Below, one piece after another: positions 6,410 to 40,830 of a stretch of DNA of 64,000 bases (position 1 is its first letter; every line of letters begins with the position of its first letter). The notes under the pieces are model-generated. The model was not told where the DNA came from. It searched no databases and worked only from the letters and a program-made list of their open reading frames with translations. The stretch is from Malacoraja senta (Eukaryota). Made by a program: the position numbers and the translations under genes. The stretch covers positions 69,750,001-69,814,000 of the forward strand of contig CM075981.1 in the NCBI GenBank assembly GCA_038087875.1, in the 5' to 3' direction.

Positions 6410-6484
6410 TTAGGCCGTCCAGTTTCTTTCCATGCTCACAGGTTCCATCCCTTCACAGTACGAGTGTGGCCGTCTGCCTTTGAA
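6410..6484 (-). CDS. CUB-mucin-SEA-EGF TM protein exon 11, last (FKGRRPHSYCEGMEPVSMERNWTA*)
   Basis: Strong acceptor tttttctttcttccag|TTC, phase 0 matching exon 10, 75 nt ending in TAA. Confidence 0.75.
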   Translation of the reverse strand, partial: FKGRRPHSYCEGMEPVSMERNWTA

Positions 6485-6537
6485 CTGGAAGAAAGAAAAA
6501 TTTGATTTTTAACAAAATCTACAGTACAATTAACATC

Positions 6538-6691
6538 GACACAAAATGCTGACTCAGCGGGTCAGGCAGCATCTCTGGAGAATAAGAATAGATGATGTTC
6601 CCGGTCGAGACCCTTCTTCAGACCCAAAATGTCACCTATTCTTTTAGTCCAGAGATGCTGCCTGACCCGCTGAGTTACTCCAGCATTTTGT
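6538..6691. repeat. Palindromic Penelope-terminus-derived element with central hammerhead remnant
   Basis: Inverted arms ctcagcgggtcaggcagcatctctgga...tccagagatgctgcctgacccgctgag. Confidence 0.8.
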
Positions 6692-6879
6692 TCTTTCTTC
6701 AGTGTAAACCCGCATCTGCAGTTCTTTTCAATGGTACAATTAGGTAATTTAGTCCAACAACTATATTAGTTTTTGTACACTCTGCCTCCTTCCACTATAA
6801 CTATCTATTTCAATTGGAGCTGGTATCCTTCAAAACGACATTTTAAAAAATGCATTAATCTCCATCTTTTCAAGTGTTT

Positions 6880-7495
6880 AATCGTAGGCCCCCCCTCGGT
6901 CATGACTGACCATGGGTGATGCATCCTAGTTGTTGGCTGCTTGCTCCAAACCTCGGCTGGAGCAGTGTCGCTTGTGGCTGTAGAAACCAATGTGGGATTG
7001 ACAGACTCTGTGGCAAAGGTCACATTTATGTGTGGTCTTTGGTCTTGAAGTTGCTGCGCTCCTTTCTGTGTGCCCGCTTGTCTGCCTCTGCGTTCAACAG
7101 TTTCTCTTCCCCTGTTTTGAGATGTTGGTTCAGGGTACCTCTCCACCTCGTGCGGTCAGCTGCAAGGCTCTCCCAGGACTCCACATCGATGTCGAGCGCC
7201 TTCATATCTCTCTTGCAGACATCCTTGTAACGTAGCTGGGGGTGGCCAATGCTTCTCCTCCCAGATGTCAGCTCTCCATAGAGGTTGTCTTTTGGAATGC
7301 GGCCATCCTCCATGCGGTGGACATGGCCCAGCCACCGCAGTCTGCGCTGCCTGCGTAGAGTGTACATACTGGGAAGGCCAGCGCGAGACAGGATCTCGGC
7401 GTTGGACACTGTCTTGCAAGGATATGCCCAGGATACAGCGGATCCTTCTCGGGTGGAAGGTGTTGCATCTTCTCTCCTGCCTGGCATATGCAGTC
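6880..7495 (-). mobile_element. RTE-clade LINE 3' fragment
   Basis: Translation VSNAEILSRAGLPSM..RRLRWLGHVHRMEDGRIPK..LYGEL..GRRS.GHPQLRYKD.CKRD is the typical RTE post-RT region. Confidence 0.88.
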
Positions 7496-8247: not shown

Positions 8248-8398
8248 CGACCTGTCCCTGCCGAGTTGGTACAGGATTGGGAAGGGTGACCACTGGTAAG
8301 GTTCAAAAGGCCAGCTGCAAACCGACAGATCACTGGCTTTCCCCGAGTCTCCTGTGTGCTCGTTGATGTTGCTGATGCTAACATCCAGGTTTTGTAGA
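8248..8398 (-). CDS. Mucin-like gene exon 10, cytoplasmic (LQNLDVSISNINEHTGDSGKASDLSVCSWPFEPYQWSPFPILYQLGRDRS)
   Basis: ttttccactgcag|T acceptor (phase 2), TCG|gtgagt donor, open frame, 151 nt. Confidence 0.78.
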
Positions 8399-11451: not shown

Positions 11452-11679
11452 CTGTGCCTGAAAGGTGGCTGACTGTGCCGTCCAGTCCTGCGACTGTTGT
11501 AAGTGCCGGTCTCTGACTCTTCGTGGCAAGAGTAGAAACTGGTGTCCAAGATATGCAGATGGATCAGTTCGTCTGAGTTACTGAAGCCGGGATTGTCCAA
11601 CGAATTCACAGAGAAGTTGAGCCAGGATTGGGACTGGTTTTGATTGGAGAAATCATCAAAGCGACTGAAACGCTTATAA
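11452..11679 (-). CDS. Mucin-like gene exon 9, cytoplasmic (YKRFSRFDDFSNQ...LDNPGFSNSDELIHL...PPFRH)
   Basis: ttcccttcccag|T acceptor, AG|gtataa donor, 228 nt, phase 2-2, fully open. Confidence 0.82.
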
Positions 11680-14023: not shown

Positions 14024-14215
14024 CTGCTTCGGGTCTGGTCCGTTTCGGCCTCGATCAGCACCACCTTGTACCTTCGGAGGACGCCGATAGCCACAGCGGC
14101 TAGCAGCAAGGCCAGAGCAAACACCGCCCCGAACACGATCGCTATCAGGCTCTGCCGGGTCACTCTGTGGTCGCACCGGGGGCCCATGTACCAATAATCA
14201 CTGCCCACGGGACAC
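14024..14215 (-). CDS. Mucin-like gene exon 8: end of EGF (CPVGSDYWYMGPRCD), TM helix (LIAIVFGAVFALALLLAAVAIGVL), RRYK stop-transfer
   Basis: ccgcag|G acceptor, AG|gtgaga donor, 192 nt; the WYxGxxC-then-TM arrangement is typical of MUC3/12/17 and IMPG2. Confidence 0.9.
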
Positions 14216-14431: not shown

Positions 14432-14845
14432 CCCTCTCCCCTGACTCTTAATCTGAAGAAGGGTCTCGACCCGAAACATCACCTATTCCTTTTCTCCAAC
14501 AGCTCCTCATATTTCGCTTGGGCAGCTTACAACCCAGTGGTACGAATATTGATGTCTAATTTCGAGTAACCCTTGCATTTCCTCACTCTCCATCCCTCCC
14601 CTCCCGAATCGTCCTGCTAATTTTACTGTTCATATCCCCTCGTTATTATCTCCAATGGACCAGTGTGGGCTCTTTGGCCATCGGTGCCGGCACTGATCAG
14701 TTCTGTACTTTTTCATACCTCCAGCTTTCCCTCTCCCCTGACTCTCAGTCTGAAGAAGGGTCTCGACCCGAAATGTCACCTATTCCTTTTTCCAGAGATG
14801 CTGCCTGACCCGCTGAGTTACTCCAGCATTTTATGTCTATCTTCG
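14432..14845 (+). mobile_element. Penelope 3'-end unit flanked by two direct-repeat hammerhead motifs (pseudo-LTR arrangement)
   Basis: ccctctcccctgactct..tctgaagaagggtctcgacccgaaa..tcacctattcctttt at ~14432 and ~14729; the internal part matches the 3' end of the PLEs at 360-1900 and 21950-22890. Confidence 0.8.
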
Positions 14846-15521
14846 CCTTTTCAGACAAACTTTCGGAAGACAGACGTCCACGCACAAAAAGCACCCGCAG
14901 TCCTCTCACACCCCAGTTCTGGTCTCTGTCTATTATTTCATGTTGATTGCCTCTTGCTATTCATTTAATGGGCCCTGGGTAAGGCCATGAGGTAACATCT
15001 CCCTGCCTGCTGCAATGCCAGGAGTAGGGACTTGGCCCCAGCAATAAAAAAGGAATGGAGATTTCAAAGTAAAGATGGTGCATCTTGGGGAGTTGGGGAA
15101 GCTGCAACTCCAATGCCCTACTGCTTTTTTTCTTCCGGGCGGTGGGGACTAGGTGCAAGGACAGAACTGTTGAGGTAGCCTTGCTGAGTTGCTGCAGATG
15201 ATGTGGTGGTAGTGAATGCTGGTGGTGGTGGATGTGGGGCCAGTAGCAGAGGTTACATTGACCAGGATGATATTGACCTCCTTGAGAGTTTTCACTTATC
15301 TTCCCTTCACACCAAGTGCTGGAGTAACTCAACGGGTCAGGCGGCATCTCTGGACAACATGGACAGTCCCAGACCTGAAACGTCATCTGCCTATGTTCTC
15401 CAAGGATGCTGCCAGGCCCACTGAGTGACTCCAGCACTTTGTGAGTTTTTCTTTTTGTAAACTAGCACCTGCAGTTTCCTGATTCTACATTCCTCCCTTC
15501 ACACCCCTTTTAGACATTAAA

Positions 15522-17120: not shown

Positions 17121-17283
17121 TGGCAGATTGGCCCCTGGCCCCGGCTGTGAGTGCAGATGCCGCTATTCTTGCAGTAGGCAGTGTGGCAGAGGGAGGTACA
17201 GCTCACGTTCCCCGACTTTCTATATACGCACTGGAACCCGTTCTGGCAGAAAAGCACCTCACCACACAAAGCAATTCGCTTTT
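17121..17283 (-). CDS. Mucin-like gene exon 7: EGF-like modules (CGEVLFCQNGFQCVYRKSGNVSCTSLCHTAYCKNSGICTHSRGQGPIC)
   Basis: (ct)n-acag|AA acceptor, CA|gtaagt donor, 163 nt, EGF cysteine spacing. Confidence 0.9.
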
Positions 17284-18764: not shown

Positions 18765-18928
18765 CTGTCACATACACCGTCACCACTTGAGCGCCACCGA
18801 TCTCGAAGCCAGCGGCAATGACAAGGCGCAGGCCACTAACATTGAAGATCAGGTTGGGCTCCAGCAAAAACCATTGCATTTCCTTCAAGGTGAAGATGGC
18901 GTCAAACTCAATCTGCACACGGCCCACA
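18765..18928 (-). CDS. Mucin-like gene exon 6: SEA domain C-terminal part (VGRVQIEFDAIFTLKEMQW...VVTVYVT)
   Basis: ccatccacag|T acceptor (phase 2), G|gtagcc donor (phase 1), 164 nt. Confidence 0.82.
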
Positions 18929-19736
18929 CTGTGGATGGAGAATGGTGAAATTAATATCATGATAGCAACAATACCAGAACTTATTAACAGAGACCTGGTA
19001 ACCAGACAGAGTGCACACAATTTCTGACCTGACACACACATAGAGAGCAATGAGACATCTAGAGGGTATCGACTGAAAACAAACATTAATCTGTTATGCA
19101 AACCAGCCTTCCCCCCATTGACCCCATCTTCACCACACTGCTCCAAGAAACCAATCAACATGATCAGTAGAAGGGTTTCGACCCGAAACGTCGCCTATTT
19201 CCTTCGCTCCATAGATGCTGCCTCACCCGCTGAGTTTCTCCAGCATTTTTGTCTACCAACATAATCAAGGACCACTCACACCCCAGTCATTCTCTCTTCT
19301 CCTCTCTCCCGTCGATCGGAAGATAGAAAACCCTGAAGGCACGCACCACCAGACTCACAAATAGCTACTTCCTCACTGTTATCAGACTCTTCAACTGATC
19401 TCTCAACTGTTGAATTTCCATTCTTTCACCGCGGCCCTTACACTTTTCTTTATCTGCACTTTCTCTGTAGCTGTACACAATATTCTGTATTTTCTTTCCT
19501 TCCTCTTTTTGTACTACCTCTTGTTCTCATGTATGGTATAGTTCTGCCCGCCCTGGCATGCAAGAACAACATTTTCACTGTATGTCAGTGTACATGACAC
19601 TAATAACCAATACTAATATCAATTATACAGCAAGTGTCTACACACTTTACCAGGACATGAAGATTGTCCATGGGAATGAAGATACATGTTAACCAAACAC
19701 AGAAATATTCCTGGACATTGATCAGCCTACACAGAG

Positions 19737-19878
19737 NNNNNNNNNNNNNNNNNNNNNNNNNNNNNNNNNNNNNNNNNNNNNNNNNNNNNNNNNNNNNNNN
19801 NNNNNNNNNNNNNNNNNNNNNNNNNNNNNNNNNNNNNNNNNNNNNNNNNNNNNNNNNNNNNNNNNNNNNNNNNNNNNN
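19737..19878. other. Assembly gap (142 N)
   Basis: Run of n. Confidence 1.
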
Positions 19879-20414
19879 GAATAAACTAGGTGAGAGGCTG
19901 AAGAATGGTCCCAACCCAAAATGTCACCCATCGTTTTTCTCCAGAGATGTTGCCTGACCCACTGAGTTACTCCAGCACTTTGTGTCTAACTGGGTGCAAG
20001 CACAGAGAAGGCACCCAGAGATATGAACCAGACATAAGCAAGGCATTATCCAGTAACACATAGCATCTAAATACATTAACCACACACCGAGATCATACTG
20101 GGTCATTGACACGGTAGACTTTAACCAGGAACACAGAATATTTACATTCGGAGACAGTAAGCAGAGAATCTACAGACTGAGACGTTAACCAGAGACACCC
20201 AGAGCACAAATAAGCAGAATATCTGGTGGTATAATGAGTACACACAGGTATTAAACAAGGTAATGTAAATCAGACACACAGCGGATGTACCCAGGCATTA
20301 ACCAGGCACACATCCACCACCCACAGACAACAGGCAAGACATGGAGCATCTGCATCCTTAAACAGATATGGAAAGGACCCAGGCACATATGCAGTCATTA
20401 ACAAATCAAACTCA

Positions 20415-20814
20415 NNNNNNNNNNNNNNNNNNNNNNNNNNNNNNNNNNNNNNNNNNNNNNNNNNNNNNNNNNNNNNNNNNNNNNNNNNNNNNNNNNNNNN
20501 NNNNNNNNNNNNNNNNNNNNNNNNNNNNNNNNNNNNNNNNNNNNNNNNNNNNNNNNNNNNNNNNNNNNNNNNNNNNNNNNNNNNNNNNNNNNNNNNNNNN
20601 NNNNNNNNNNNNNNNNNNNNNNNNNNNNNNNNNNNNNNNNNNNNNNNNNNNNNNNNNNNNNNNNNNNNNNNNNNNNNNNNNNNNNNNNNNNNNNNNNNNN
20701 NNNNNNNNNNNNNNNNNNNNNNNNNNNNNNNNNNNNNNNNNNNNNNNNNNNNNNNNNNNNNNNNNNNNNNNNNNNNNNNNNNNNNNNNNNNNNNNNNNNN
20801 NNNNNNNNNNNNNN
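20415..20814. other. Assembly gap (400 N)
   Basis: Run of n. Confidence 1.
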
Positions 20815-21959
20815 GAGCATCCACGGACATCATCTGGTCACAGAGAGTGTTCAGTGATATTAACCAGGCACGGTGTGGCCACAGAAATGAACCAAACATG
20901 TAAGTCACACAACAAGCATGTAAATCCATTAACCAGACACTGACTGACATTCACTGACATTAAACAGATGCACCAGGGGTGTCCACAGATGCCAACCTGA
21001 TAGAAAGAATCTCCACAGATATTAACCCCAAACATAGAGGTTTCACCAACATTAACCAGACCATCAAAGGGTAAACGCTGAGATACTAACCACGTACACA
21101 GAAACACATTCACGAGGCAGACGCAATGTGCCAGCAGACCTTACCAGACACAAACAGAGACCTCAGAGAACAGCAGGCAGGCAGAGACCATCTGCAGACA
21201 TTCACCAGATGGTGGGTGTCCACAGACATTAATGAAACAGAGAGAGCAGTCAAACACATTATTGAAGCTTGTAGAACATCCACATGCATTAAGACAGAGC
21301 AAGTCCTCAGACATGAAGCACACACAACAAGTATTAACCATGGACATGGATGTTAATCAGATACAGAGAGCATCCAGAGATGGTAACTAAACACACAACT
21401 TGTCCAAATTAACCACATACGGCATCTAGCAACATTAACTGGGTGTCCATAGACATGAACCAGACACACACACACTGTCCACAGACATTAACCAGACACA
21501 CACCGTATCCACCGACACTAACCAGACACACACTGACTGTCCAGACATTAACCAGACATTAACCAGACACATACACTGTTTCCACAGACATTAACCAGAC
21601 ATTAACCAGACATTAACCACACACTGAGAGTCCACAGACGTTAACCAGACACACACCATGTCCATAGACATGCAGCATCCACAGATGTTTATCTGACATA
21701 TTTACAGAGCATCCTCAGAGATTAATAAAATAGAAATAATCCAAAGATATTAACCAGATGGACAATCAGTGCAAACACAGACACATAAGTCACAATGACA
21801 GTGCTCATGGACATTAACCTGACACACAAAGCATACGGCATGAATGGCTGACATTCCACCCTTCACTCAAAGCTGTTGTCATTGTTATCACTGAGTTTCC
21901 TGACATTATAGGGGTCACTAAAAACCTGACTGAACAAGCTAGAACACCATTGCTACTGT

Positions 21960-24828: not shown

Positions 24829-24887
24829 CTGAAGCGTTTAATCTGCAGCTGCTGAAACCCAGGAACCTTGTCATAAAATGGAACGAT
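24829..24887 (-). CDS. Mucin-like gene exon 5: SEA middle (IVPFYDKVPGFQQLQIKRF)
   Basis: gtcctgcag|ATC acceptor, AG|gtgatg donor, 59 nt; PGF..L.I..F motif of MUC3/17- and IMPG-type SEA domains. Confidence 0.82.
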
Positions 24888-25759: not shown

Positions 25760-25875
25760 TTTGAGTGTGAAATCCTTGGCCAGGTTCTGGTATTCGTCGG
25801 ACTTTGAGTCTTCCAGTTGATGATCAAAGCTCATGTCCAGAATAAGCTTTGTTGGAATCTTTACAGTGATGCCCT
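25760..25875 (-). CDS. Mucin-like gene exon 4: SEA N-terminal part (GITVKIPTKLILDMSFDHQLEDSKSDEYQNLAKDFTLK)
   Basis: ctcttgcag|AG acceptor, AAA|gtaaga donor, 116 nt; F...L.D..S.EY..L is the SEA signature. Confidence 0.88.
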
Positions 25876-28847: not shown

Positions 28848-31800
28848 CTCTGACCTGTGGTAGCCGGTCCTCCACGATAAAAATCTGCTTGTGTCTCTCT
28901 GGAGGAGTGGACAGTGAGACTGTGTACTCCGCAGCTCCAGAGGTGGCTGGTGTGTGCTGCTGCTGCTGCCCGATGCTCTGCACAGCTCCCACTCGCTCTG
29001 TATCCCCAGCTGACGATGTTGGCCTGACTGATGTATTGATGCTTGGCTGGGACGTAGGGTGCAGGAGTGCAAATGATCCGGTGTTTGGTGCGGGCAAAGT
29101 TAGAGCAGAGCCAACCCTGCCCCGTGTCTGGTTGATGCCTGTACCCCTTGTCCCATTTACGCCTGTGGTCTGTGTCCGACTGACATCTGTGTTCTGTGTC
29201 TGACTGGCATCTGTACTCAGTGTAGGTCTGATGTGTGAGGTCAGTGTATTAATGATGTCCTGGCTCTGTGTCTCGCTAACATCCATGGTCAGTGTCTGAC
29301 CAATATTCGGGCCTAATGTCCAGCTGATGTCTGTGCTCTCTGTCTGACTGTCATCCATGTTGAATGTCCATCTGTTGCCTGTACTCTCTGTCTCACTCAC
29401 AACCATGCCCTCCGTCTGGCTCATGTTGATGCTTTCTGTCCAGTTGATGTCTGGGCTCTCTGTCTGACTGATGTCTGGGCTCTGTGTCTGACTGATGTCT
29501 GTGCTCTCTGTCTGAATGATGTCTGTGTTCTCCGTCTGACTGATGTCTGGGCTCTGTGTCTGACTGATGTTCATGTTATCTGTCCCAATAACGCCCGTGC
29601 TCTCGATCAGACTGACATCTCTGCTCTGTGTCCAATTGATGTCTGTACTCTGTGTCCTTCTGATGTGTGTGCTCTGTGTCTGAGTGATATCCGTTAGCAG
29701 TGTCCGGCTGCTGCCTGCACTCAGTGTCCGACTGATGTCAGTGTTTAGTGTCTGACTGAAGTCTGGGTTCAGTGTCTGACTGATGTCTGTGCTCTGTGTC
29801 TGACTGACACCCATGTTCTGTGTCAGACTGATGCCCATACCCAGTGTCTGACTAATGTCGGTGTTCTGTGTCTGACTGACATCTGTACTCAGTGTAGGTC
29901 TGGTGTGTGAGGTCAGTGTATTAATGATGTCCTGGCTCTGTGTCTCGCTAACATCCATGGTCAGTGTCTGACTGATATTCGGGCCCAATGTCCAGCTGAT
30001 GTCTGTGCTCTCTGTCCGACTGATATCCCAGACCTCTGTCTGACTGTCAACTGTGTTGAATGTCTGTCTGTTGCCTGTACTCTCTGTCTCACTCACAACC
30101 ATGCTCTCCGTCTGGCTCATGTTGATGCTTTCTGTCCAGTTGATGTCTGGGCTCTCTGTCTGACTGATGTCTGGGCTCTGTGTCTGACTGATGCCTGGGC
30201 TCTGTGTCTGACTGATGTCTGCGCTCTGTGTCTGACTGATGCCTGGGCTCTGTGTCTGACTGATGCCTGGGCTCTGTGTCTGACTGATGTCTGGGCTCTG
30301 TGTCTGACTGATGTCTGGGCTCTGTGTCTGACTGATGCCTGGGCTCTGTGTCTGACTGATGTCTGCGCTCTGTGTCTGACTGATGCCTGGGCTCTGTGTC
30401 TGACTGATGCCTGGGCTCTGTGTCTGACTGATGCCTGGGCTCTGTGTCTGACTGATGCCTGGGCTCTGTGTCTGACTGATGCCTGGGCTCTGTGTCTGAC
30501 TGATGTCTGCGCTCTGTGTCTGACTGATGCCTGGGCTCTGTGTCTGACTGATGCCTGGGCTCTGTGTCTGACTGATGTCTGCGCTCTGTGTCTGACTGAT
30601 GCCTGGGCTCTGTGTCTGACTGATGTCTGCGCTCTGTGTCTGACTGATGCCTGGGCTCTGTGTCTGACTGATGTCTGGGCTCTGTGTCTGACTGATGCCT
30701 GGGCTCTGTGTCTGACTGATGTCTGCGCTCTGTGTCTGACTGATGCCTGGGCTCTGTGTCTGACTGATGTCTGGGCTCTGTGTCTGACTGATGCCTGGGC
30801 TCTGTGTCTGACTGATGCCTGGGCTCTGTGTCTGACTGATGTCTGGGCTCTGTGTCTGACTGATGTCTGGGCTCTGTGTCTGACTGATGCCTGGGCTCCG
30901 TGTCTGACTGATGTCTGCGCTCTCTGTCTGACTGATGTCTGCGCTCTCTGTCTGACTGATGTTCATGTTATCTGTCCTAATGACACCCGTGCTCTCAATC
31001 AGACTGACATCTCTGCTCTGTGTCCAATTGATGTCTGTACTCCGTGTCCTTCTGATGTGTGTGCTCTGTGTCTGAGTGATATCCATTAGCAGTGTCCGGC
31101 TGCTGCCTGCACTCAGTGTCTGACTGACGTCTGGGCCCAGTGTCCGACTGATGTCTGTGTTTAGTGTCTGACTGATGTCTGGGTTCAGTGTGTGGCTGAC
31201 GTTTGGGCCCGATGTCCGACTGACATCTGTTTTTAGTGTCTGACTGATGTCTGGGTTCAGTGTCTGATTAATGTCGGTGTTCTGTGTCTGACTGACATCT
31301 GTACTCAGTGTAGGTCTGATGTGTGAGGTCAGTGTATTAATGATGTCCTGGCTTTGTGTCTCGCTGACATCCATGGTCAGTGTCTGACTGATATTCGGGC
31401 CCAATGTCCAGCTGATGTCTGTCCTCTCTGTCCGACTGATAGCTGAGCCCTCTGTCTGACTGTCATCCATGTTGAATGTCCGTCTGTTGCCTTTACTCTC
31501 TGTCTCACTCAAAACCATGCTCTCCATCTGGCTCATGTCGATGCTTTCTGTCCAGTTGATGTCTGGGCTCTCTGTCTGACTGATGTCTGTGCTCAGTGTC
31601 TGACTGATGTCTGCGCTCTGTGTGTGACTGATGTCTGGGCTCTGTGTCTGACTGATGTCTGGGCTCTGTGTGTGACTGATGTCTGCGCTCTGTGTCTGAC
31701 TGATGTCTCGGCTCTGTGTGTGACTGATGTCTGGGCTCTGTGTCTGACTGATGTCTGGGCTCTGTGTGTGACTGATGTCTGCGCTCTGTGTCTGACTGAT

Positions 31801-34800
31801 GCCTGGGCTCTGTGTGTGACTGATGTCTGGGCTCTGTGTGTGACTGATGTCTGCGCTCTGTGTCTGACTGATGTCTGGGCTCTGTGTCTGACTGATGTCT
31901 GGGCTCTGTGTGTGACTGATGTCTGCGCTCTGTGTCTGACTGATGTCTGGGCTCTGTGTGTGACTGATGTCTGCGCTCTGTGTCTGACCGATGTCTGTGC
32001 TCTGTGTCTGACTGATGTCTGCATTCTCTGTCTGACTGATGTCTGGGCTCTGTGTGTGACTGATGTCTGCGCTCTGTGTCTGACTGATGTCTGGGCTCTG
32101 TGTGTGACTGATGTCTGCGCTCTGTGTCTGACTGATGTCTGCGCTCTGTGTCTGACCGATGTCTGTGCTCTGTGTCTGACTGATGTCTGGGCTCTGTGTG
32201 TGACTGATGTCTGCGCTCTGTGTCTGACTGATGTCTGCGCTCTGTGTCTGACCGATGTCTGTGCTCTGTGTCTGACTGATGTCTGGGCTCTGTGTGTGAC
32301 TGATGTCTGCGCTCTGTGTCTGACTGATGTCTGGGCTCTGTGTGTGACTGATGTCTGCGCTCTGTGTCTGACCGATGTCTGTGCTCTGTGTCTGACTGAT
32401 GTCTGCATTCTCTGTCTGACTGATGTCTGGGCTCTCTGTCTGACTGATGTTCATGTTATCTGTCCTAATGACACCCGTGCTCTCGATCAGACTGACATCT
32501 CTGCTCTGTGTCCAATCGATGTCTGTACTCCGTGTCCTTCTGATGTGTGTGCTCTGTGCCTGAGTGATATCCGTTAGCAGTGTCCGGCTGCTGCCTGCAC
32601 TCGGTGTCTGACTGATGTCTGGGCCCAGTGTCCGACTGATGTCTGTGTTTAGTGTCTGACTGATGTCTGTGTTCAGTGTCTGACCGACGAGTGAAGTTAG
32701 TGTCTGACTGATGTCTGTGTTTAGTGTCTGACTGACGTCTGGGCCCAGTGTCTGACTGACACCTGTGTTTAGTGTCTGACTGATGTCTGGGCTCCATGTC
32801 TGTCTGGTATCCTTGCTGAGTGTTGAGGCGCTAGGAGTGCTATGTGTTATAAATAAGTCAGTCGGTACTAAAGTTGACGAGAGTTGTGGAGTGATTTTGG
32901 GATGAGTTGACGAGCCTGATGTAGGTGACCCCCCATGACTGCTCGTTTCCACCACGGAATCAGGCTGAGCAACATCGGCTAACGTCGTCAACATTTTCCA
33001 TTGCCATTGTTCAGTTAACCAAGGCCGTGCTGACAGCATTGCTAGGTTGCCAAGATCTTCTGTGCCAACATGTGCGATAGGAAGCTTTGAAGAACCCTTG
33101 GGCACTGAACTCAGCGTCCATGATGTGAAAGATTCCTCACTGACTAAAGAACCCTCTGCAGAAGATGAAGGTGGTGTAGGAGAGTTACTCTCCAAGCTGA
33201 TGCTGGTCGGTAGGGCTGATGCCCCACTCGAGGCTGGAGAGGAGCTGCCAGGCCTTTGCCAACTCACCACACCCCACTGGTCAACAGGAGGCTGAGATGT
33301 TGTCAGAAGGCCAAGCTCAGATGGCTGGAACTTGGCCAAGTTGGTCACCGAAACAGGCAGCGACGAGGATGGTGGGAATTGTGCCCCAGAATGGGTTGGG
33401 TCTGAGAAATCAAAAGTCAAGGAAGGGGTGGTTGGAGCAACCAAACTTCCCAAAGTGGTCACGTCCTGGTTCTGGACTTGTGCCAAGGTCTTGCCCGGTA
33501 AAACTCTTCCTGAAGACCATGCATTGGGCAATGTGATTTGACGTGATGGCCTGGTGTTAGGCAGCGTTGGTGATCTCCAGGGAAACCATGTGAATAGCAA
33601 GGCTGTTTGGAGATCCAACGCATTGGGTGGAGTATCACTGTGGTCAACGTCAGTGGGTGGTGGGCTTCTGTTTGCCAGAGGCCGGGATATGATGACTTCG
33701 GTGGTGAAAAGCCTCGTAAGGCCGGTGAAACGTCCGGAACTGGGAGAGGTGTTGATCGGCCCCGTTGTCAAGTACCTTCCATCCATTGCCAGTGAGTGCG
33801 ATGGTGCAGTCTGTGTGGTGTCCACATTATTCATAGAAGGAACAGCTGAAGGGATTCCAGCGACTTGGGCACAGCCGCTGACTCCTGTCTCGCAGATCAG
33901 ACTTTCCACATCTGTTTCCTGGTCGGTGGAAGGTCCCCGCACTGGGAGCTTGGAAGAATGTGTAGTCAGTTCAGGACTTTCTAACACACTCCCCGGTTTA
34001 ATCGCCGCTTGGCTGTGGGCTGCTGGAGCGGCGGAGGAAATGTCTTTGAATTGGAATTTCCTTTGCATGCCGCCAAGCTGACTCACTTCTGCTGAGGTCA
34101 GCAGATGGTGGCTTCGGAGATCACCTGCGTTTGAATTGCGAACGTGGAGTGAGGTGGGCCTGTGGGTGTGGCTCGTGTGAGAGGAGAGAGCACCGTGTTT
34201 CCCGGAGCCCAATGCAGTCTCCCGGTGCTCTGTGGAGGACTGAGCGGCGCGGAGTTCCGCAGTGGAGCCGAGGTCCGGTTTGTGGCTGGGTGCCGGGTCC
34301 CGGGCCGTTCCTCTCCCGTGCAAGTAGTCAACGCCCTGGGACCCTCCGACTGCTCCCCGGCTGCCCCCGGGTCTTGTAAACCGGGCAATGTTGCCGGCTT
34401 TGAGTGACCGGCCCGGTGCCAGAGACCCCGGGGTGTTGGGGTGGGACTCGGTTGCAACCCCACCCCGACCGCCTTCGGCTTCGCTGCTGCTGCTGCTGCT
34501 GCCCGTCTCATCGTCACCCCTGGTCAGCCTTGGCTCCTGCCCCAACCCCGAGCCCGGGACACGGCGCCTGCCCGTCTTGCCTTCCTGGTGGCTCATCACA
34601 TCATCCGCCTGGGGAACCAGTGACCGGGGTAGTGACCGGGCTCCATCCACCAGCGTGATGTTCTCAGGGGTGAATAAAAAAGACCCAAGGCTGGGTCTCA
34701 GCACTAGGCTGGAGTTCATGTTCGCTCTGGAGGTGAGTGTTGGCGCGGGCAATGGCTTCCGACCGCTGATGGAGTTCGACTGGGAGCTTCCAATGGGGCC

Positions 34801-35420
34801 GGAGATGTTGTTGACAAATGGTGCAAGGATGGAGAAGCGACCTGGGCGAGAGCTGGAGGCAGAGCGTGGTCCTGGGGTTGTGCCGCTGCTGTGTCCGGTG
34901 TGGGAGACGGGATTGAGTTGTGTGCCGCTGCTGTGTCCAGTGTGGGAGACGGGATTGAGTTGTGTGCTGCTGCTGTGTCCAGTGTGGGAGACGGGATTGA
35001 GTTGGGTGCCGCTGCTGTGTTGAGGGGCAGGGTTGGGTTTGGTGTGGGTGGTGGAGATGGAGTCAGGCGTAGCAGCAGATTCTCCTGGAGACGCCAGTCT
35101 TGTCGAGTTGGGATGTGATGACACACGGGGATCCGCCTGGCGATGCCTTGCTGCCGGGATGTTTCCTGGCACCGGGTGGGCTCGGGTTCCCCGCTTGGGG
35201 CGGACTGGAAGATTGGGAGCCTGGGAGCGGTGGTGGACGCCGGCAGGTGGTTTACTCGCCAGCTCCTTTCCACTGGGTTTCGGGACTTGATCGGACGACT
35301 CGGGGGACATTAAGATTTCTTTGCGTTTGAAGCCAGCTTCCTTTCCCCGGACTGGAGAAGGGTTTGGAATCGCCATCAGTGGCTCCGGGCCATTGGGGTC
35401 CATTCCTCTGCTGGGTAGTC
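28848..35420 (-). CDS. Mucin-like gene exon 3: giant 6,573-nt Ser/Thr/Pro-rich stalk exon with 8-aa tandem repeats
   Basis: Lies within the 2247-aa ORF; gggacag|GA acceptor and AGAG|gtacgc donor give a symmetric phase-1 exon (2191 codons) joining the CUB and SEA exons in frame. Confidence 0.9.
29170..32790 (-). repeat. Coding 24-bp minisatellite (D/G-I-S-Q/H-T-Q-S-P/A/T) in three higher-order blocks; homogeneous cores ~30140-30960 and ~31560-32450
   Basis: Plus-strand unit gtctgactgatgtctgggctctgt repeated dozens of times; landmark tgtccggctg at 29701, 31093, 32581. Confidence 0.97.
34882..35020 (-). repeat. Coding 42-bp tandem repeat x3 (TQLNPVSHTGHSS[G/S])
   Basis: Visible in both the DNA and the translation. 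Confidence 0.9.
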
Positions 35421-35586
35421 CTGTCCCAAACATGAGAACAAAGCACGAGTGAGATTATTCAGGTACAACCCTGGCATTCAGTTTGCAGTTTTAGTCATGT
35501 TTGGGACGGCTCGGGGTCGCCGTTTACATCACGTTTTCTAGGGTCCAACACCAATCAGAGGGGGAAATATATAAACACACAGAAGA

Positions 35587-35751
35587 TAGACCCAAAAAGC
35601 TGGAGTAACTCAGCGGGACAGGCAGCATCTCTGGAGGGAAGGAATGGGTGACCTTTCGGGTCGAGACCCTTCTTCAGACCCGAAACGTCACCCATTCCTT
35701 CCCTCCAGAGATGCTGCCCAGGCAGCTGAGTTACTCCAGTTTTTTGTGTCT
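35587..35751. repeat. Near-perfect palindromic Penelope-terminus element
   Basis: About 75-bp inverted arms around gagacccttcttca. Confidence 0.85.
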
Positions 35752-36142
35752 ATCTTCGGTTTAACGCAGCATCTGCAGTTCCTTCCTATATAACCACACA
35801 AGCGCGTATACACAGAGGCGCGAAGCTACACGCGTATGTATGTATGTGTACAACGAGTGTACTCACACCTCCTGAGGCGCTGCTCCAGAGTGGAGTCAGA
35901 TTGAAGATGAGATCGAATGCACCAGCAGAGCTGATCTGGTGTGGTTTTTAACCAGCGTCTTCAAAGGAGAAAACAGACCGAGAGATTAGGATGGAATCAC
36001 CGACTATGGAGCTCGGCGACTGCAAACGTGAGGATCAGCAACAGATTGGAAGTAGAGAAGCCGGCAGCTTGGAATTAGAGACAGAGAAAGGTGCAGGTGC
36101 AGCGATTTCACAAAGGCAGTCAAACATATACTAAACCATACA

Positions 36143-36307: not shown

Positions 36308-36466
36308 TTTTTTGCTCGATTCCATTATTTGTGATTCCTTATGTATCCATGCACAGAAACAAAGACAAATTCTCCCTCTTTATTATGTATTTATCTCTAT
36401 CTCTATAGAGATCTCACTCACTCACAATGGCAGGAGTCTCGCTGTGCCTCAGTCCGCCAAACTTAC

Positions 36467-36853
36467 CCAAGTACTGCAGGGTAAATCTATGCTTGAAGCC
36501 AGAAGTCAATGCTTTAAGAGTGATAACAACCGGCCCTCGCGCTCGGATCACAAGCTTCTTTCCAGCTTCGTGGATACTCCAGAAGAGGCCACAGAATTCA
36601 CTTTCCTTTTCTGTTGCTTCCAGTTTGATTGTCAAGTGGGCAGAAGAAGTACAGCCGGCATCGGTCCGGGGCGTTGTCTGATTTGACACAACCTCCAACT
36701 CGACGGCCGCCGCTCTGGGTGCTGGCAGAATCCAGTAACACTTGATCCCATTGACGGAGTCGGTCGCAGGCAGGGAATACTGCGAGATTCCCTGGGTGAC
36801 ATTGGGAAGCAGAACACCGCCACACTCCTCCTGGGATGGGCCGAGGAGAAACC
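36467..36853 (-). CDS. Mucin-like gene exon 2: end of signal peptide and CUB domain (ECGGVLL...KCYWIL...GCTSS...EFCG...RFTLQY)
   Basis: ttcttcag|GG acceptor, G|gtaagt donor, 387 nt, phase 1-1, open; CUB hallmarks CGG, CxW, C, FCG and terminal F..Y. Confidence 0.85.
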
Positions 36854-36892
36854 CTGAAGAACACAGATTGTGATTAAAGGAACAACTGCACT

Positions 36893-37150
36893 CATACAGT
36901 CAGTGCTGGGACACAGTGCTGTTATTCACACAGTCAGAGCTGGGATTACAGTCCCTGTCATACACAATGTTGGGACATAGTGCTGTTGTACACACAGTCA
37001 GTGCATCGGATTAGTCTTGTCATACACACAGAGTGCTGGGATTACAGTCCCGTCACACAGTCAGTGCTGGGATAGACAGCGCTGTTGAACACACAGCTGT
37101 TCTGACAAACTCGGTGCTGTTGTACACATGATCACTGCTGGGACATGCAC
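36893..37150 (+). repeat. ~34-bp degenerate minisatellite next to the CUB exon acceptor
   Basis: cacagtcagtgctggga(t/c)acagt... repeated about 7 times. Confidence 0.8.
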
Positions 37151-38099
37151 TCTATTGTCCACACATACCTTGGGGATGCAAGCAAAGAATTTCACTGTGA
37201 CTTGTCACATGTGACAATAAAATATTCAATTCAACCCACTCACTGTGTTGTACCTATATTTAAGAATGGCTGGAAGGACAAATGAGGGAAAAATAGGGCA
37301 GTGCGCCTGAGGTGGCTGAGTGACTGGAGGGGATTCTATGGGACACAATTTACCCAACATTGGTAAGATTCCAAATAATGATGAGATGGAATATAGGAAG
37401 GAGATAGAGAGTTTAGTGACATTGTGCCAAGACAACAAACTCTCCCTCAATGTCAGCAAAATAAAGCTCATCATCGACTTGTTTAATCAGGGTGAGTTCA
37501 CACCCCAGTCTGTATCAGTGGTGCTGAAGTGGAAATGGTCTAGAGCTTCAAGTTCCTAGGTGTAAAATTCACCAACAATTTGACATGTCCAACCAAATGA
37601 ATTCTATGGCCAAGAAACCACACCGATGTCTTTCTTGCCTCAGAAGACAAAGGAAATTTGATGTATGCAATGACCTTTACCAATTTCTAGAAATGCAGCA
37701 TAGAAAGCATCCTATTTGAATGCATTACAGCAGTTTGGTAACTGTGTAGGAAGGAACTGCAGATGCTGGTTTAAACCGATGATGGACACAAAAAGCTGGA
37801 GTAACTCAACGGGTCAGGCAGCATCTCCGGAGAAAAGGAATAGGCGACGTTTCAGGTTGAGACCTTTCAACAGTCTGAAGGGTCTCTGGCATTGTAAGGC
37901 AGCAACTCTACCGCTGCGCCACCGTTTCACAGAGATGCCGCCTGACCTGCTGAGTTACTCCAGCTTTTTGTGTCTATCTTAGGTCGAAGACAGCAAGCAA
38001 TTGGTGAGAGTTGTGGGTGCAATCCAGTAAATCGCACAAAGCATCCTCTCTCCCCATTGACTCCATCTACATTTCACGCTGCCTTAGGAAGGTCAAGTC

Positions 38100-39830
38100 A
38101 TAAGGTCATAAGTAATAGGAGCAGAATTAGGCCATTCGGCCCATCAAGTCTACACCATTCAATCATGGCTGATCTATCTCTCCCTCCTAACCCCATTCTC
38201 CAGCCTTAAAAACATAGAAACATAGAAAATAGGTGCAGGAGGAGGCCATTTGGCCCTTCGAGCCAGCACCGGCATTCATTGTCATCATGGCTGATCATCC
38301 ACAATCAGTAACCCGTGCCTGCCTTCTCCCCATATCCCTTGATTCCGTTAGCCGCTAGAGCTCTATCTAACTCTCTTTTAAATTCATCCAGTGAATTGGC
38401 CTCTATTGCTTTATGTGGGAGAGATTTCCACAAATTCGCAACTCTCTGGGTGAAAAAGTTTTTTCTCATCTCAGTTTTAAATGGCCTCTCCTTTATTCTT
38501 AGACTTTGGCCCCTGGTTCTGGACGCCCCCAACATTTGGAATATTTTTCCTGCATCTAGCTTGTCCAGTCCTTTTATAATTTTATATGTTTCTATAAGAT
38601 CCCCTCATCCTTCTAAATTCCAGTGAATATAAGCCCAGTCTTTTCAATCTTTCCTCATATGACAGTCCTGCCACCCTGGGGATTAACCTCGTGAACCTAC
38701 GCTGCACTGCCTCAATAGCATGAATGTCCTTCCTCAAATTAGGAGACCAAAACTGCACACAATACTCCAGATGTGGTCTCACCAGCGCCCTGTACAACTG
38801 CAGAAGGATCTCTTTACTCCTATACTCTAATCCTCTTGTTATGAAGGCCTACATGCCATTAGCTTTCTTCACTGCCTGCCATACCTGCATGTTTACATTC
38901 AGTGACTGGTGTACAAGGACACCCAGGTCTCGTTGCACTTCCCTTTTTCCTTATCTGACAGCATTGAAATAATAATCTGCCTTCTTGTTCTTGCCGCCAA
39001 AGTGGATAACCTCACATGTATCTACATTATACTGCATCTGCCATGTATCTACCCACTCACTCAACCTGTCCAAGTCACCCTGCAACCTCCTAGCATCCTC
39101 TTCACAGTTCACACTGCCACCCAGCTTTGTGTCATCTGCAAATTTGCTAGTGTTACTTTTAATTCCATCTAAATCATTAATATATATTGTAAATAGTTGT
39201 GGCCCCAGCACCTTGCAGCTCTCCACTCGCCACTGCCTGCCATTCTGACAGGGACCTGTTTATTCCTACTCTTTGTTTCCTGTCTGCCAACCAATTTTCT
39301 ATCCATGTCAATACCCTACCCCCAATACCATGTGCTCTAATTTTGCCCACTATTCTCCTGAAAGTCCAGATGCACTACATCCACTGGCTCTCCTTCATCC
39401 ATTTTACTTGTCACATCCTCAAAAAATTCCAGATTAGTCAAGCAGGATTTCCCCTTCATAAATCCATGCTGACTTGGACCAATCCTTTTACTGCTATCCA
39501 AATGTGCCGTTATTACTTCTTTGATAATTGACTCCAGCATCTCCCCCACAACCGATGTCAGGCTAACTGGTCTATAAGAATTCCACAGATTCACCACCGT
39601 CTGGCTAAATAAATTCTTCCTCGTCTCTTTCCTAAACGAACGTCCTTTAATTCTGAGGCTATGACCTCTAGTCCCAGACTCTCCCACTATTGGAAACATC
39701 CTCTCCACATCCACTCTATCCAAGCCTTCAACTATTCGGTAAGTTTCAATGAGTGACCCCCTCATCCTTCTAAACTCCAGCGAGTACAGGCCCAGTGCCA
39801 TCAACGCTCATCATATAACCTACTAATTCC
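38100..39830 (-). mobile_element. Composite/nested CR1 LINE fragments (RT and C-terminus)
   Basis: YRPVSLTSVVG, QHGFMKGKSCLTNL, VLGPQLF.IYINDL, KFADDTKLGG, LVRPHLEYCVQFWSP. Confidence 0.92.
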
Positions 39831-40189
39831 TGGGAAAGCAGCCAACATAATCAATGACAACTCACACCTCAGTCATTCTCTTCTTCCCTCTTCCTTGGAC
39901 AGAAGATACAAAACCCTGATAATATGTACCACCAAATGCAAGAATAGTTTCTTCACCACTGAATTTAGATTCTTGAATGGACTTCTTTTTTTGCTAAAGA
40001 TTGGATCCTGATCTCAATCTACCTCATTGTGGACTTTACACCTTTTTTAAACCTGCACTTTCTCTGTAATTGTACAATCGGTTTATTTTCTCTTTTTTAA
40101 CTACCTGGTGTACTCGTGTATGCTATGACTTGCCTGAATAGTACGCAAAATAAAGTTTTTTCAATGTATCTCGGTACACGTGAATGCTG

Positions 40190-40830
40190 CTGCGCACACG
40201 ATACTGAGTACTGAGACACTAGCTGCTATTGTACATACGCAGCTGTGCGCTCTGGTTACTTCCGCGAAAAAGACGTATTTGTAACAGTTATCAGAGCGCC
40301 ACAGGCTCGTTCAAAAAAGTACGTTGCATTTTGAAAAATGTGCGACAGTATTTGAGTTAAACGCGAGAGAATTGCAGTTAAACGCCATCTCCTGGAGCCA
40401 TTTCGCCCCTCTATCCCGGACTGCAAACTCAGGTTACCTGCGTTGGCGAGAAGCAGAAGCCAGCTTGCTCTGGCCCACATGGTCCATCCGAGAGGAGGCC
40501 GAGGAGCCCAGCGGGAAGAGAGCGGCTGCCGACCCGGGAGCTGCATTGATCGGAGCGAAAGGCAAGGAGCCCGGAGGGTGGCTCGTTGATCCTGATATCC
40601 CAGCGCTTGTGGTTGGCCGGCAGCCGGAGAGGATATCCGACCCAAACCCTGTCAGGGAAATGGGAGCATGTCTGGGAGAACTAGGAGGGAGAAGTGGGAG
40701 AGACAGAGAGACCCGAGGAGAGGAGGGGGGAGAATGAATGGGGAAACTGGGGAGGGAGGCTGATACAGCAAACTGGGCGAGTGCAGGGTACGGGATGTTA
40801 ACAGGTGGCCGCGGCTTGTGCAGGAAGGAA
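40190..40830. promoter_or_regulatory. CpG/GC-rich promoter region of the mucin-like gene
   Basis: Local rise in CpG density around exon 1 compared with the CpG-poor flanks. Confidence 0.55.
40438..40480 (-). CDS. Mucin-like gene exon 1: signal peptide start (MWARASWLLLLANA)
   Basis: ACCATG Kozak context in a CpG-rich region, CAG|gtaacc donor in phase 1; spliced to exon 2 it gives MWARASWLLLLANAGFLLGPSQEEC, a plausible signal peptide. Confidence 0.78.

What the first reader, a model, noticed from the sequence alone, without database searches (positions are those of the whole stretch)
6410..40480. Unnamed ~2,716-aa type-I membrane mucin with CUB-mucin-SEA-EGF-EGF-TM architecture between TNRC6A and NDUFAB1
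Seen: 11 exons (43, 387, 6573, 116, 59, 164, 163, 192, 228, 151, 75 nt; 8151 in total) with GT-AG junctions and matching phases form one open frame. The ORF track shows only pieces of it. Established: SEA, EGF-like WYxGxxC and TM is the membrane-proximal design of MUC3/12/17 and IMPG2, but as I know them they have no N-terminal CUB domain, and I know no such gene beside human NDUFAB1/PALB2 or TNRC6A. Inference: a glycocalyx receptor or sensor that holds a CUB ligand-binding head on a long O-glycosylated stalk and signals through a ~170-aa tail; possibly lost in mammals and uncharacterised.
Basis: partly seen in the sequence, partly recalled or inferred. Interest (0 to 1): 0.85.

Follow-up and report, generated by a model that had tools for sequence, protein, structure and literature searches.

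The report
Skate orthologue of vertebrate vap gene
The 11-exon membrane mucin gene is real and intact, but it is the skate copy of a gene found across jawed vertebrates and named vap (vascular associated protein) in zebrafish, whose nearest human relative is the retinal proteoglycan IMPG2.

Summary
On the minus strand, 11 GT-AG exons with the stated lengths join into one 8151-nt frame of 2716 aa. Both assembly gaps lie in intron 5. The thorny-skate orthologue runs straight from exon 5 to exon 6, so the gaps hide no coding exon.

The architecture is signal peptide, divergent CUB, 6.6-kb Ser/Thr-rich repeat exon, SEA, two EGF-like domains, TM and a 168-aa tail.

The gene is not unnamed. RefSeq annotates orthologues in sharks, sturgeons, coelacanth, lungfish, amphibians, reptiles, birds, monotremes and teleosts. 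Most carry meaningless automatic names. NCBI labels the Mustelus and Gasterosteus copies "vap", and UniProt calls the Astyanax and Triplophysa copies "Vascular associated protein". That zebrafish gene has one 2012 paper, which I could not read.

No therian mammal was among the hits, but the searches were length-limited. The nearest named human protein by fold is IMPG2. The tail is the best conserved part.

Verdict: an ordinary orthologue of a poorly studied family. The function is inferred: a cell-surface, probably vascular, glycocalyx receptor.

The parts
41227..41331 (-). Upstream exon, probably 5'UTR or alternative first exon. The Amblyraja RefSeq model reads it as an N-terminal extension.
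   Evidence: tblastn of P0001 residues 2-40, 77% identity. Shark orthologues start instead at the position of the ATG at 40480.
40438..40480 (-). Exon 1 (43 nt): ATG and signal peptide MWARASWLLLLANA|G.
   Evidence: Same N-terminus in Heptranchias, Heterodontus and Chiloscyllium orthologues.
36467..36853 (-). Exon 2 (387 nt, phase 1-1, so skippable in frame): divergent CUB domain with four Cys.
   Evidence: phmmer hits starfish cubilin (5e-20, 11 stretches) and multi-CUB proteins. Pfam CUB is above cut-off for the Heterodontus orthologue, 23.8 bits. The AF2 model is all-beta, and the best VIA-align matches are CUB domains, Z up to 8.5.
28848..35420 (-). Exon 3 (6573 nt = 2191 codons, phase 1-1): Ser/Thr-rich mucin-like stalk, 31% S+T.
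   Evidence: 76% identical to Amblyraja over the non-repetitive first 860 aa. Isoforms without this exon are annotated in Chiloscyllium (P0107, P0117).
29445..32806 (-). Tandem array inside exon 3: 24-nt (8-aa, DISQTQSP-like) unit, about 140 copies, arranged in three super-repeats of about 465-495 aa.
   Evidence: TRF. Motif positions and octamer runs of 272 and 264 aa.
25760..25875 (-). Exon 4 (116 nt): start of the SEA domain.
   Evidence: Pfam SEA positions 9-34, E=0.0097 on the exon alone. 29.3 bits, above cut-off, on the joined Amblyraja sequence.
24829..24887 (-). Exon 5 (59 nt): SEA, middle part (VPGFQQLQIKRF).
19737..20814 (.). The two assembly gaps (19737-19878 and 20415-20814), both inside intron 5 and next to a loose intronic tandem array.
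18765..18928 (-). Exon 6 (164 nt): SEA, C-terminal part. The autoproteolysis position reads VGRVQI instead of G|SV.
   Evidence: GS[VIL] in 41 of 94 orthologues; absent in both skates.
17121..17283 (-). Exon 7 (163 nt): EGF-like 1 and first half of EGF-like 2.
   Evidence: Invariant cysteines in 94 orthologues. AF2 pLDDT 72-85.
14024..14215 (-). Exon 8 (192 nt): end of EGF-like 2 (CPVGSDYWYMGPRC), TM helix (aa 2524-2548), juxtamembrane RRYK.
   Evidence: EGF weak in Pfam, 16.8 bits, and weak matches to human EGF in the PDB. Confident TM helix in AF2.
11452..11679 (-). Exon 9 (228 nt): cytoplasmic tail, part 1 (SSYKRFSRFDD, SLDNPGF).
8248..8398 (-). Exon 10 (151 nt): tail, part 2 (DSGKASDLSVCSWPFEP..W.PFP).
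   Evidence: tblastn with P0001, 83% identity. Motif invariant in 94 orthologues.
6410..6484 (-). Exon 11 (75 nt): tail end, RRPHSYCEGMEPVSMERNWTA, then stop.
   Evidence: The C-terminus (E/K)RxWTA is shared by nearly all orthologues.

Best explanation
Shown: this is the intact skate orthologue of the gnathostome gene called vap (vascular associated protein) in zebrafish. It encodes a type I membrane protein of 2716 aa. The parts are a signal peptide, one divergent CUB domain, a 2191-aa Ser/Thr-rich repeat stalk in a single in-frame-skippable exon, one SEA domain, two EGF-like domains, one TM helix and a 168-aa disordered tail. The tail is the most conserved part of the protein. The SEA-EGF-EGF-TM module is most like that of IMPG2, but the gene is a separate lineage, with its own conserved place between NDUFAB1 and TNRC6A.

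Inferred: it works as a cell-surface glycocalyx receptor, probably on vascular endothelium as the zebrafish name and gene-set membership suggest. The CUB head would bind a ligand at the end of a long O-glycosylated stalk. The SEA-EGF module would form the rigid membrane-proximal base. In most vertebrates the SEA carries the G|SV self-cleavage motif, but in skates it reads VGRV or VGGV and is probably uncleaved. The tail would signal through short linear motifs that never vary: a juxtamembrane SSYRRFxRFDD, an LxNPxF site of the kind bound by PTB domains, a DSGKAS site shaped like a beta-TrCP phosphodegron, a WP.EP..W.PFP stretch and the C-terminal (E/K)RxWTA. Skipping exon 3 or exon 2 would give short or headless isoforms.
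For: - Gene model.
- Orthologues: P0001 Amblyraja is 92-96% identical in all domains. There are 45 plus 81 hits from sharks to monotremes, with 100% coverage of the C-terminal 394 aa.
- vap naming: XP_078096447 'uncharacterized protein vap [Mustelus asterias]' is 68% identical. XP_040041995.2 is 'vap [Gasterosteus]'. UniProt gives 'Vascular associated protein' for Triplophysa rosa and Astyanax; another sequence of the same 90%-identity Astyanax cluster (P0130) is named 'Si:ch211-14k19.8'.
- Literature: the vap paper's title is cited. si:ch211-14k19.8 is listed in a zebrafish blood-vasculature gene set.
- Synteny: NDUFAB1 > gene > < TNRC6A holds in the window, Amblyraja and zebra finch, where PALB2 also lies upstream. 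The platypus locus shows only the convergent TNRC6A side: no gene is called in its 10-kb upstream flank.
- Domains: SEA is above the Pfam cut-off. The AF2 model has SEA pLDDT 82-97, EGFs 72-85, a TM helix and a tail at about 40.
- Closest human relative by fold: IMPG2, residues about 870-1197, E about 4e-10.
- Tail conservation: 44-81% identity against 25-65% for SEA. Invariant motif columns in 94 sequences.
- Exon-3-skipped isoforms in Chiloscyllium.
Against: - No expression data exist for the skate.
- The zebrafish paper could not be read, so its functional claims are known by title only, and I never compared the zebrafish protein itself.
- CUB does not reach the Pfam cut-off on the window's own sequence: no hit on exon 2 alone, and 16.9 against 21.4 bits on Amblyraja. 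The CUB model has pLDDT of only 62.
- The CUB head is missing from frog, bird and monotreme models, so it cannot be essential to the family's core function.
- O-glycosylation, motif function and partners are all untested.
- The stalk has less Pro (5-7.5%) than classical PTS domains.
- si:ch211-14k19.8 was also found enriched in iridophores, so expression is not purely vascular.
Confidence: 0.72

Rival explanations
1. One reading: a previously unnamed, uncharacterised membrane mucin with a new CUB-headed architecture, lost in mammals.
For: Most RefSeq names are meaningless automatic ones, such as mucin-2, mucin-5AC-like, collagen alpha-1(I)-like and uro-adherence factor A-like. I found only one paper on the family. 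No therian hit appeared.
Against: NCBI and UniProt/Ensembl tie the family to zebrafish vap, which has a 2012 functional paper. Monotremes keep the gene. The same model is already in RefSeq for the sister skate.
Confidence: 0.08
2. An IMPG-type matrix proteoglycan. The ectodomain would be released at the SEA domain and organise an extracellular matrix, with the tail serving only for trafficking.
For: IMPG2 gives the best Swiss-Prot fold matches over SEA2-EGF-EGF-TM. Some bird and caecilian orthologues are auto-named IMPG2. IMPG1 and IMPG2 are reported to be cleaved in the SEA domain (title cited). 41 of 94 orthologues keep GS[VIL].
Against: Identity to IMPG2 is only 19-21%. There is one SEA domain, not two. 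In the two skates the cleavage serine is replaced, so release at SEA is unlikely here. A tail conserved better than the ectodomain argues for signalling. Hyaluronan-binding motifs were not examined.
Confidence: 0.12
3. An epithelial barrier mucin of the MUC3/12/13/17 kind, serving as gut, gill or skin glycocalyx.
For: MUC3B and MUC13 are the next best fold matches. The Atlas feature search on the EGF-TM exon lists 'mucin-3A' clusters. The gene has a long tandem-repeat Ser/Thr exon.
Against: The domain order differs. MUC3/12/13/17 have an EGF on each side of SEA (my knowledge of those proteins), whereas here both EGFs follow SEA and no Cys-rich module precedes it. The zebrafish orthologue is annotated as vascular. 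The locus is unrelated.
Confidence: 0.06
4. Not a working gene: a decaying copy, or an over-joined prediction across repeats and gaps.
For: Two assembly gaps lie within the gene's span. Repeat-rich exon 3 is open in several frames.
Against: All 11 exons are open, canonically spliced and more conserved than the introns. The gaps are intronic. The tail exons are conserved across about 450 My of vertebrates.
Confidence: 0.02

Closest known systems
Zebrafish vap (vascular associated protein; formerly si:ch211-14k19.8) and its RefSeq orthologues, e.g. Amblyraja radiata 'uro-adherence factor A-like' (P0001)
   Same: Same orthologous family. Identity to the Amblyraja protein is 92-96% in CUB, SEA, EGF-TM and tail. 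Identity to the shark protein labelled vap is 68% over 394 aa. The exon structure, the C-terminus and the NDUFAB1/TNRC6A neighbours are the same.
   Different: The stalk is longer than in most species: 2716 aa against about 1050-1700 in birds, teleosts and frogs. The SEA cleavage serine is lost in skates. Cartilaginous fishes lack the extra EGF that follows CUB in bony vertebrates. The zebrafish protein itself was not available for direct comparison.
IMPG2 (SPACRCAN), human Q9BZV3
   Same: SEA followed by tandem EGF-like domains, one TM helix and a cytoplasmic tail of about 120-170 aa, with a mucin-like region upstream. It is the best fold match in Swiss-Prot, aligning IMPG2 residues about 870-1197. 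IMPG2 domain positions are from PMC10558372.
   Different: Identity is only 19-21%. IMPG2 has a second, N-terminal SEA and no CUB. Its locus differs. IMPG2 is retinal, whereas vap is annotated as vascular in zebrafish.
MUC3/MUC12/MUC13/MUC17 membrane mucins
   Same: Type I membrane mucins with a tandem-repeat Ser/Thr stalk, SEA, EGF-like domains next to the membrane and the xYxGxxC EGF end. MUC3B and MUC13 are fold matches 4 and 5.
   Different: They have an EGF-SEA-EGF order (my knowledge) against SEA-EGF-EGF here. They have no CUB, and their tails are unrelated. The G|SVVV site is absent in the window.
CUB domains of cubilin, Neto2, MASP-1, C1r and neuropilin
   Same: Four-Cys pattern, beta-sandwich fold, about 100-106 residues superposed at about 3.1-3.4 A with Z 7.5-8.5. 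phmmer E=5e-20 to cubilin.
   Different: Very divergent: below the Pfam cut-off on the skate sequence. Calcium-site residues were not assessed.

Membership tests
vap (vascular associated protein) orthologous group | Strong full-length similarity of SEA-EGF-EGF-TM-tail to proteins carrying the vap name | tested here: met
   P0004 'vap [Mustelus asterias]' is 68% identical over 394 aa to the Amblyraja orthologue (E 9e-186). The window's pieces are 62-78% identical to it. P0092 'vap [Gasterosteus]' and P0083/P0131 'Vascular associated protein' are in the same hit set.
vap (vascular associated protein) orthologous group | Family-specific cytoplasmic tail motifs and C-terminus (SSYRRFxRFDD, SLDNPxF, DSGKAS, SWP.EP, ...WTA) | tested here: met
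   All are present in the window's exons 8-11. The columns are invariant or nearly so in 94 orthologues.
vap (vascular associated protein) orthologous group | Conserved position between NDUFAB1 and the 3' end of TNRC6A | tested here: met
   NDUFAB1 on one side and TNRC6A on the other in the window, Amblyraja and zebra finch, with PALB2 beyond NDUFAB1. For platypus only the TNRC6A side is shown; no gene was called in the upstream flank. TNRC6A identity was checked by tblastn. Not examined in zebrafish.
vap (vascular associated protein) orthologous group | Direct alignment with the zebrafish Vap protein of Kawahara et al. 2012 | not tested
The link rests on NCBI and UniProt/Ensembl name transfer.
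IMPG1/IMPG2 proteoglycans | SEA followed by tandem EGF-like domains (and a TM helix in IMPG2) | tested here: met
   IMPG2 of mouse, rat and human are fold matches 1-3, E 3.5e-10 to 5.3e-10.
IMPG1/IMPG2 proteoglycans | Two SEA domains flanking the mucin-like region | tested here: not met
   A single SEA in Pfam scans of the window's exons and of full-length P0001. The N-terminal domain is CUB.
IMPG1/IMPG2 proteoglycans | Orthology-level sequence identity | tested here: not met
   19-21% identity in the structural alignment. The locus differs.
MUC3/12/13/17-type membrane mucins | EGF-SEA-EGF order next to the membrane | tested here: not met
   There are no cysteines between the repeat region and SEA, and both EGFs follow SEA.
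MUC3/12/13/17-type membrane mucins | SEA autoproteolysis site G|SVVV | tested here: not met
   The window reads FSVGRVQIEF and Amblyraja reads VGGVQIEF. 41 of 94 orthologues do carry GS[VIL].
MUC3/12/13/17-type membrane mucins | Long tandem-repeat Ser/Thr-rich domain in one large exon | tested here: met
   A 24-nt unit in about 140 copies. 31% S+T over 2191 aa. Glycosylation itself is not testable here.
CUB domain (Pfam PF00431) | Pfam gathering score | tested here: inconclusive
   No hit on the window's exon 2. 16.9 bits against a 21.4 cut-off but full profile coverage on P0001. 23.8 bits on the Heterodontus orthologue.
CUB domain (Pfam PF00431) | Sequence link to undoubted CUB domains, and the CUB beta-sandwich fold with two disulfides | tested here: met
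   phmmer hits cubilin at 5e-20 and multi-CUB proteins at 1e-6 and 2e-5. Four Cys sit at the expected places. The top VIA-align rows are almost all CUB domains, Z 7-8.5, on a model of only pLDDT 62.

The most novel reading that the evidence does not exclude
vap may be a third, overlooked IMPG-type lineage. On this reading it is an ancestral jawed-vertebrate surface receptor with a CUB head on a mucin stalk and a signalling tail (an LxNPxF site plus a DSGxxS degron). It would act in the vascular glycocalyx and would have been lost in therian mammals when the NDUFAB1-TNRC6A interval was rearranged. Skates would have stretched the stalk to about 2200 aa and abolished SEA self-cleavage.
Probability: 0.2. 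Interest if true: 0.6.

Novelty: new member of a known kind. Interest (0 to 1): 0.33.

Why it matters
The finding itself is ordinary: a correct gene model for the skate copy of a gene that is already annotated and already named in zebrafish.

What the work adds is a clearer picture of a nearly unstudied family:
- It is present from sharks to monotremes, always beside TNRC6A (and NDUFAB1 wherever the upstream flank showed a gene).
- Its cytoplasmic tail, with invariant short motifs, is better conserved than its ectodomain.
- It has an optional CUB head and a mucin stalk of very variable length.
- No therian copy was found within the limits of these searches.

A surface receptor kept this long, tied to blood-vessel and red-cell development by one zebrafish paper and missing from mouse and human, would explain why it has been overlooked. 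It may be worth a proper knockout and a search for tail partners. The junk names in RefSeq (mucin-2, collagen-like, uro-adherence factor) could also be replaced by one family name.

Tried and rejected
- Chaining exons by brute force timed out twice. I replaced it with a per-exon search using phase.
- I first doubted exons 10 and 11, because exon 9 can read on to a stop at 11442 and the two small exons lie near the TNRC6A 3' end. I dropped the doubt once every orthologue ended with those exons' sequence.
- Pfam and PDB sequence searches on the single exons gave almost nothing. Spliced proteins have no reference, so I used the Amblyraja orthologue (92-96% identical) as a proxy for the Pfam, PDB and structure work on the C-terminal module.
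- The Atlas feature search on the tail exon gave no lead. On the EGF-TM exon it gave only generic EGF-TM and mucin-3A clusters.
- Plain Foldseek on the low-confidence CUB model gave a mixture of beta-sandwich folds. Only the VIA-align second look sorted CUB domains to the top.
- The AlphaFold cluster search returned unnamed SEA proteins and added little.
- The first HMMER job was lost and had to be re-sent.
- The Kawahara 2012 paper is not held. Searches for further vap or IMPG3 literature found nothing relevant.
- A search for inverted copies of the coding 24-mer at 4 or fewer mismatches found none.
- HEG1 came to mind as a vascular EGF-EGF-TM mucin but was not among the top 30 fold matches.

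Full report
**1. Observation**

The large open frame lies on the minus strand, so the gene runs from 40480 down to 6410.
- 40480-40438
- 36853-36467
- 35420-28848
- 25875-25760
- 24887-24829
- 18928-18765
- 17283-17121
- 14215-14024
- 11679-11452
- 8398-8248
- 6484-6410

Every intron is GT-AG with a pyrimidine-rich acceptor. The join is 8151 nt and translates to 2716 aa plus a single final stop.

**2. The assembly gaps**

The N runs are at 19737-19878 and 20415-20814, both inside intron 5 (24828-18929). The SEA domain reads on across the exon 5/6 join (…QIKRF-S-VGRVQIEF…). tblastn of the thorny-skate orthologue places its residues up to 2129 on exon 5 and from 2130 on exon 6. No residue is missing, so the gaps hide no coding exon and do not touch the frame. 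I neither looked up nor filled their letters. A loose tandem array lies beside them, which probably explains why the assembly broke there.

**3. Orthologues**

I searched with the non-repetitive first 860 aa of exon 3. This returned one protein, P0001, 'uro-adherence factor A-like [Amblyraja radiata]', 2453 aa and 76% identical.
- The window's CUB, SEA, EGF-TM and tail pieces are 92-96% identical to it.
- All exons align end to end and in order with the Amblyraja locus, at 94.7-98.3% against about 79-92% for introns.

The window therefore comes from a skate close to Amblyraja.

Searching with the C-terminal 394 aa of P0001 and with the echidna orthologue gave 45 and 81 hits. They cover sharks, sturgeons and paddlefish, gar, coelacanth, lungfish, salamanders, caecilian, frogs, turtles, lizards, birds, echidna and platypus, and many teleosts. 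No therian mammal appeared. These searches only admit proteins of 1350-4290 and 1054-3355 aa, so a shorter therian protein cannot be excluded.

**4. The name**

Most names are automatic and meaningless: mucin-2, mucin-5AC-like, mucin-17, collagen alpha-1(I)-like, NACA-like, and even 'IMPG2 protein' in some birds. Several sources point to one real name:
- RefSeq labels the Mustelus asterias and Gasterosteus aculeatus genes 'vap'.
- UniProt calls the Triplophysa rosa and Astyanax entries 'Vascular associated protein'.
- Another sequence of the same 90%-identity Astyanax cluster (P0130, 1225 aa) is named 'Si:ch211-14k19.8'.

[quoted passage not shown] I know it only from its citation in PMC4498767 and PMC4350073, because the paper is not held.

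Two papers mention si:ch211-14k19.8. One lists it in a zebrafish blood-vasculature gene set (PMC11968557). The other finds it enriched in iridophores (PMC3706446).

**5. Domains**

*CUB.* Exon 2 alone has no Pfam CUB hit and no PDB sequence match. Other evidence supports the assignment:
- A phmmer search of 1.84 billion representatives returned only 11 proteins. They were the cartilaginous-fish orthologues, starfish cubilin (5e-20, 11 stretches) and two proteins with six Pfam CUB domains each.
- The Heterodontus orthologue passes the Pfam cut-off (23.8 against 21.4 bits). Amblyraja and coelacanth fall just below it.
- An AF2 model from 18 sequences is all-beta but only pLDDT 62.
- Foldseek alone was unspecific. 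In the VIA-align second look nearly all top rows are CUB domains: Neto2, MASP-1, spermadhesin, C1r, neuropilin, TSG-6, PCPE-1, enteropeptidase and Kremen. They score Z 7-8.5 over about 100 of 128 residues.

I accept a divergent CUB.

*Mucin stalk.* The array has a 24-nt unit in about 140 copies. It forms three super-repeats with octamer runs of 272 and 264 aa. S+T is 31%.

*SEA.* It is above the Pfam cut-off on the joined sequence (29.3 bits), and AF2 pLDDT is 82-97.

*EGF-like domains, TM and tail.* Pfam is weak on the EGFs (16.8 bits). All their cysteines are invariant in 94 orthologues and the region is folded in AF2. The TM helix spans aa 2524-2548 and the tail is 168 aa.

**6. What is conserved**

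The tail is the best conserved part. Identity is 71-81% with sharks, about 59-64% with sturgeons, paddlefish and coelacanth, about 50-56% with turtles, 47-49% with frogs and 44% with echidna. The SEA domain scores 25-65% or is undetectable.

AF2 leaves the tail disordered, at pLDDT about 40. The conservation therefore sits in short linear motifs:
- QT(R/K)SSYRRFxRFDD
- SLDNPxF
- DSGKAS
- SSWP.EP..W.PFP
- RRPHSYCEGMELV
- the C-terminal (E/K)RxWTA

By my knowledge of such motifs, LxNPxF resembles PTB-binding and endocytic signals, and DSGxxS is the shape of the beta-TrCP phosphodegron. Neither has been tested.

The SEA self-cleavage motif GS[VIL] is present in 41 of 94 orthologues but reads VGRV in the window and VGGV in Amblyraja.

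The CUB head varies across lineages:
- It is full length in cartilaginous fishes, sturgeons, coelacanth, lungfish, turtles and several teleosts. In bony vertebrates an extra EGF follows it.
- It is missing from the frog, bird and monotreme models and from one Astyanax isoform.

Exons 2 and 3 are both phase 1-1. Chiloscyllium isoforms X3 and X4 join CUB directly to SEA.

**7. Surroundings**

The TNRC6A C-terminal exons lie on the plus strand at 2782-2952 and 3981-4373. NDUFAB1 lies on the minus strand at 45134-51500.

The same order, NDUFAB1, then the gene, then a convergent TNRC6A, holds in Amblyraja and zebra finch; in the finch PALB2 lies upstream of NDUFAB1. In platypus the convergent TNRC6A neighbour is present, but no gene is called in the 10 kb held upstream, so NDUFAB1 is not shown there. 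The TNRC6A neighbour was verified by tblastn.

From memory, and not tested, human NDUFAB1 and TNRC6A lie about 1 Mb apart with other neighbours. That would fit a therian rearrangement at this interval.

**8. Closest known families**

A Swiss-Prot fold search with the C-terminal model puts mouse, rat and human IMPG2 first. The match covers IMPG2 residues about 870-1197 (SEA2, EGF tandem, TM), with E about 4e-10 and 19-21% identity. MUC3B, MUC13, MUC4 and IMPG1 follow. IMPG2's domain map is taken from PMC10558372.

The gene shares the membrane-proximal design of IMPG2 but fails membership: it has one SEA rather than two, a CUB head, low identity and its own locus. It also fails the MUC3/12/13/17 order of EGF-SEA-EGF.

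**9. Mechanism (inferred)**

I read it as a surface glycocalyx receptor, probably vascular. It would consist of:
- a ligand-binding head on a long glycosylated stalk
- a rigid SEA-EGF base, uncleaved in skates
- a disordered tail that recruits adaptors and is turned over through phosphorylation

I put the identity as a vap orthologue at about 0.9 and this mechanism at about 0.35.

**10. Verdict**

This is a new member of a known but poorly studied family, of modest interest.

Noticed in passing
window 2782-2952 and 3981-4373 (+): C-terminal coding exons of TNRC6A (RRM-like and last exon). The last exon is 100% identical in protein to Amblyraja, 89% to platypus and 88% to zebra finch. Its stop is only about 2 kb from the mucin gene's stop, so the two 3'UTRs probably overlap tail to tail.
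   Followed up: partly
window 45134-45319, 47453-47671, about 51400-51500 (-): NDUFAB1 (acyl carrier protein) exons, including the DSLD phosphopantetheine site. Its 3' end lies a few kb upstream of the mucin gene's first exon.
   Followed up: partly
window 47885-49060 (+): A long open frame that looks like a Tc1/mariner-type transposase, inside an NDUFAB1 intron. Judged by eye only.
   Followed up: no
window 39807-38308 (-), 27220-26870 (-), 7649-7029 (-), 52321-53922 (+): Fragments of reverse-transcriptase-bearing retroelements (LINE-like, with a recurring ...FFTQRVVNLWNSLP... ending) in introns 1, 3 and 10 and downstream of NDUFAB1. Judged by eye.
   Followed up: no
many places, e.g. window 6565-6765, 14748-14960, 19927-20000, 22730-22885, 35691-35825 (-): A short interspersed element whose translation reads ...KCWSNSAGQAASLE... 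or ...TQNAGVTQRVRQHLW... It recurs on both strands throughout the introns and flanks.
   Followed up: no
window 21444-21623, with similar sequence from about 19600 to 21600: A loose intronic tandem array (units of 11, 30 and 43 nt, CAGACATTAACCAGACACACA-like) beside the two assembly gaps. An exact-style search at 4 or fewer mismatches found no inverted copies.
   Followed up: partly
window 41227-41331 (-): An upstream exon that the Amblyraja RefSeq model reads as coding, giving a 96-aa extension before the signal peptide. Shark orthologues start at the later ATG, so the extension is probably an annotation artefact of a 5'UTR exon.
   Followed up: partly
loci of other sharks (proteins P0105, P0106, P0108, P0116 versus P0003, P0005, P0006): In Carcharodon, Stegostoma and Hemiscyllium, RefSeq lists an N-terminal 'uncharacterized' or 'cadherin-related 5-like' piece with the CUB head and, separately, a C-terminal 'mucin' piece. 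This looks like one gene split in two by the annotation, probably at the repeat exon. I did not check whether the two pieces adjoin on the contig.
   Followed up: no
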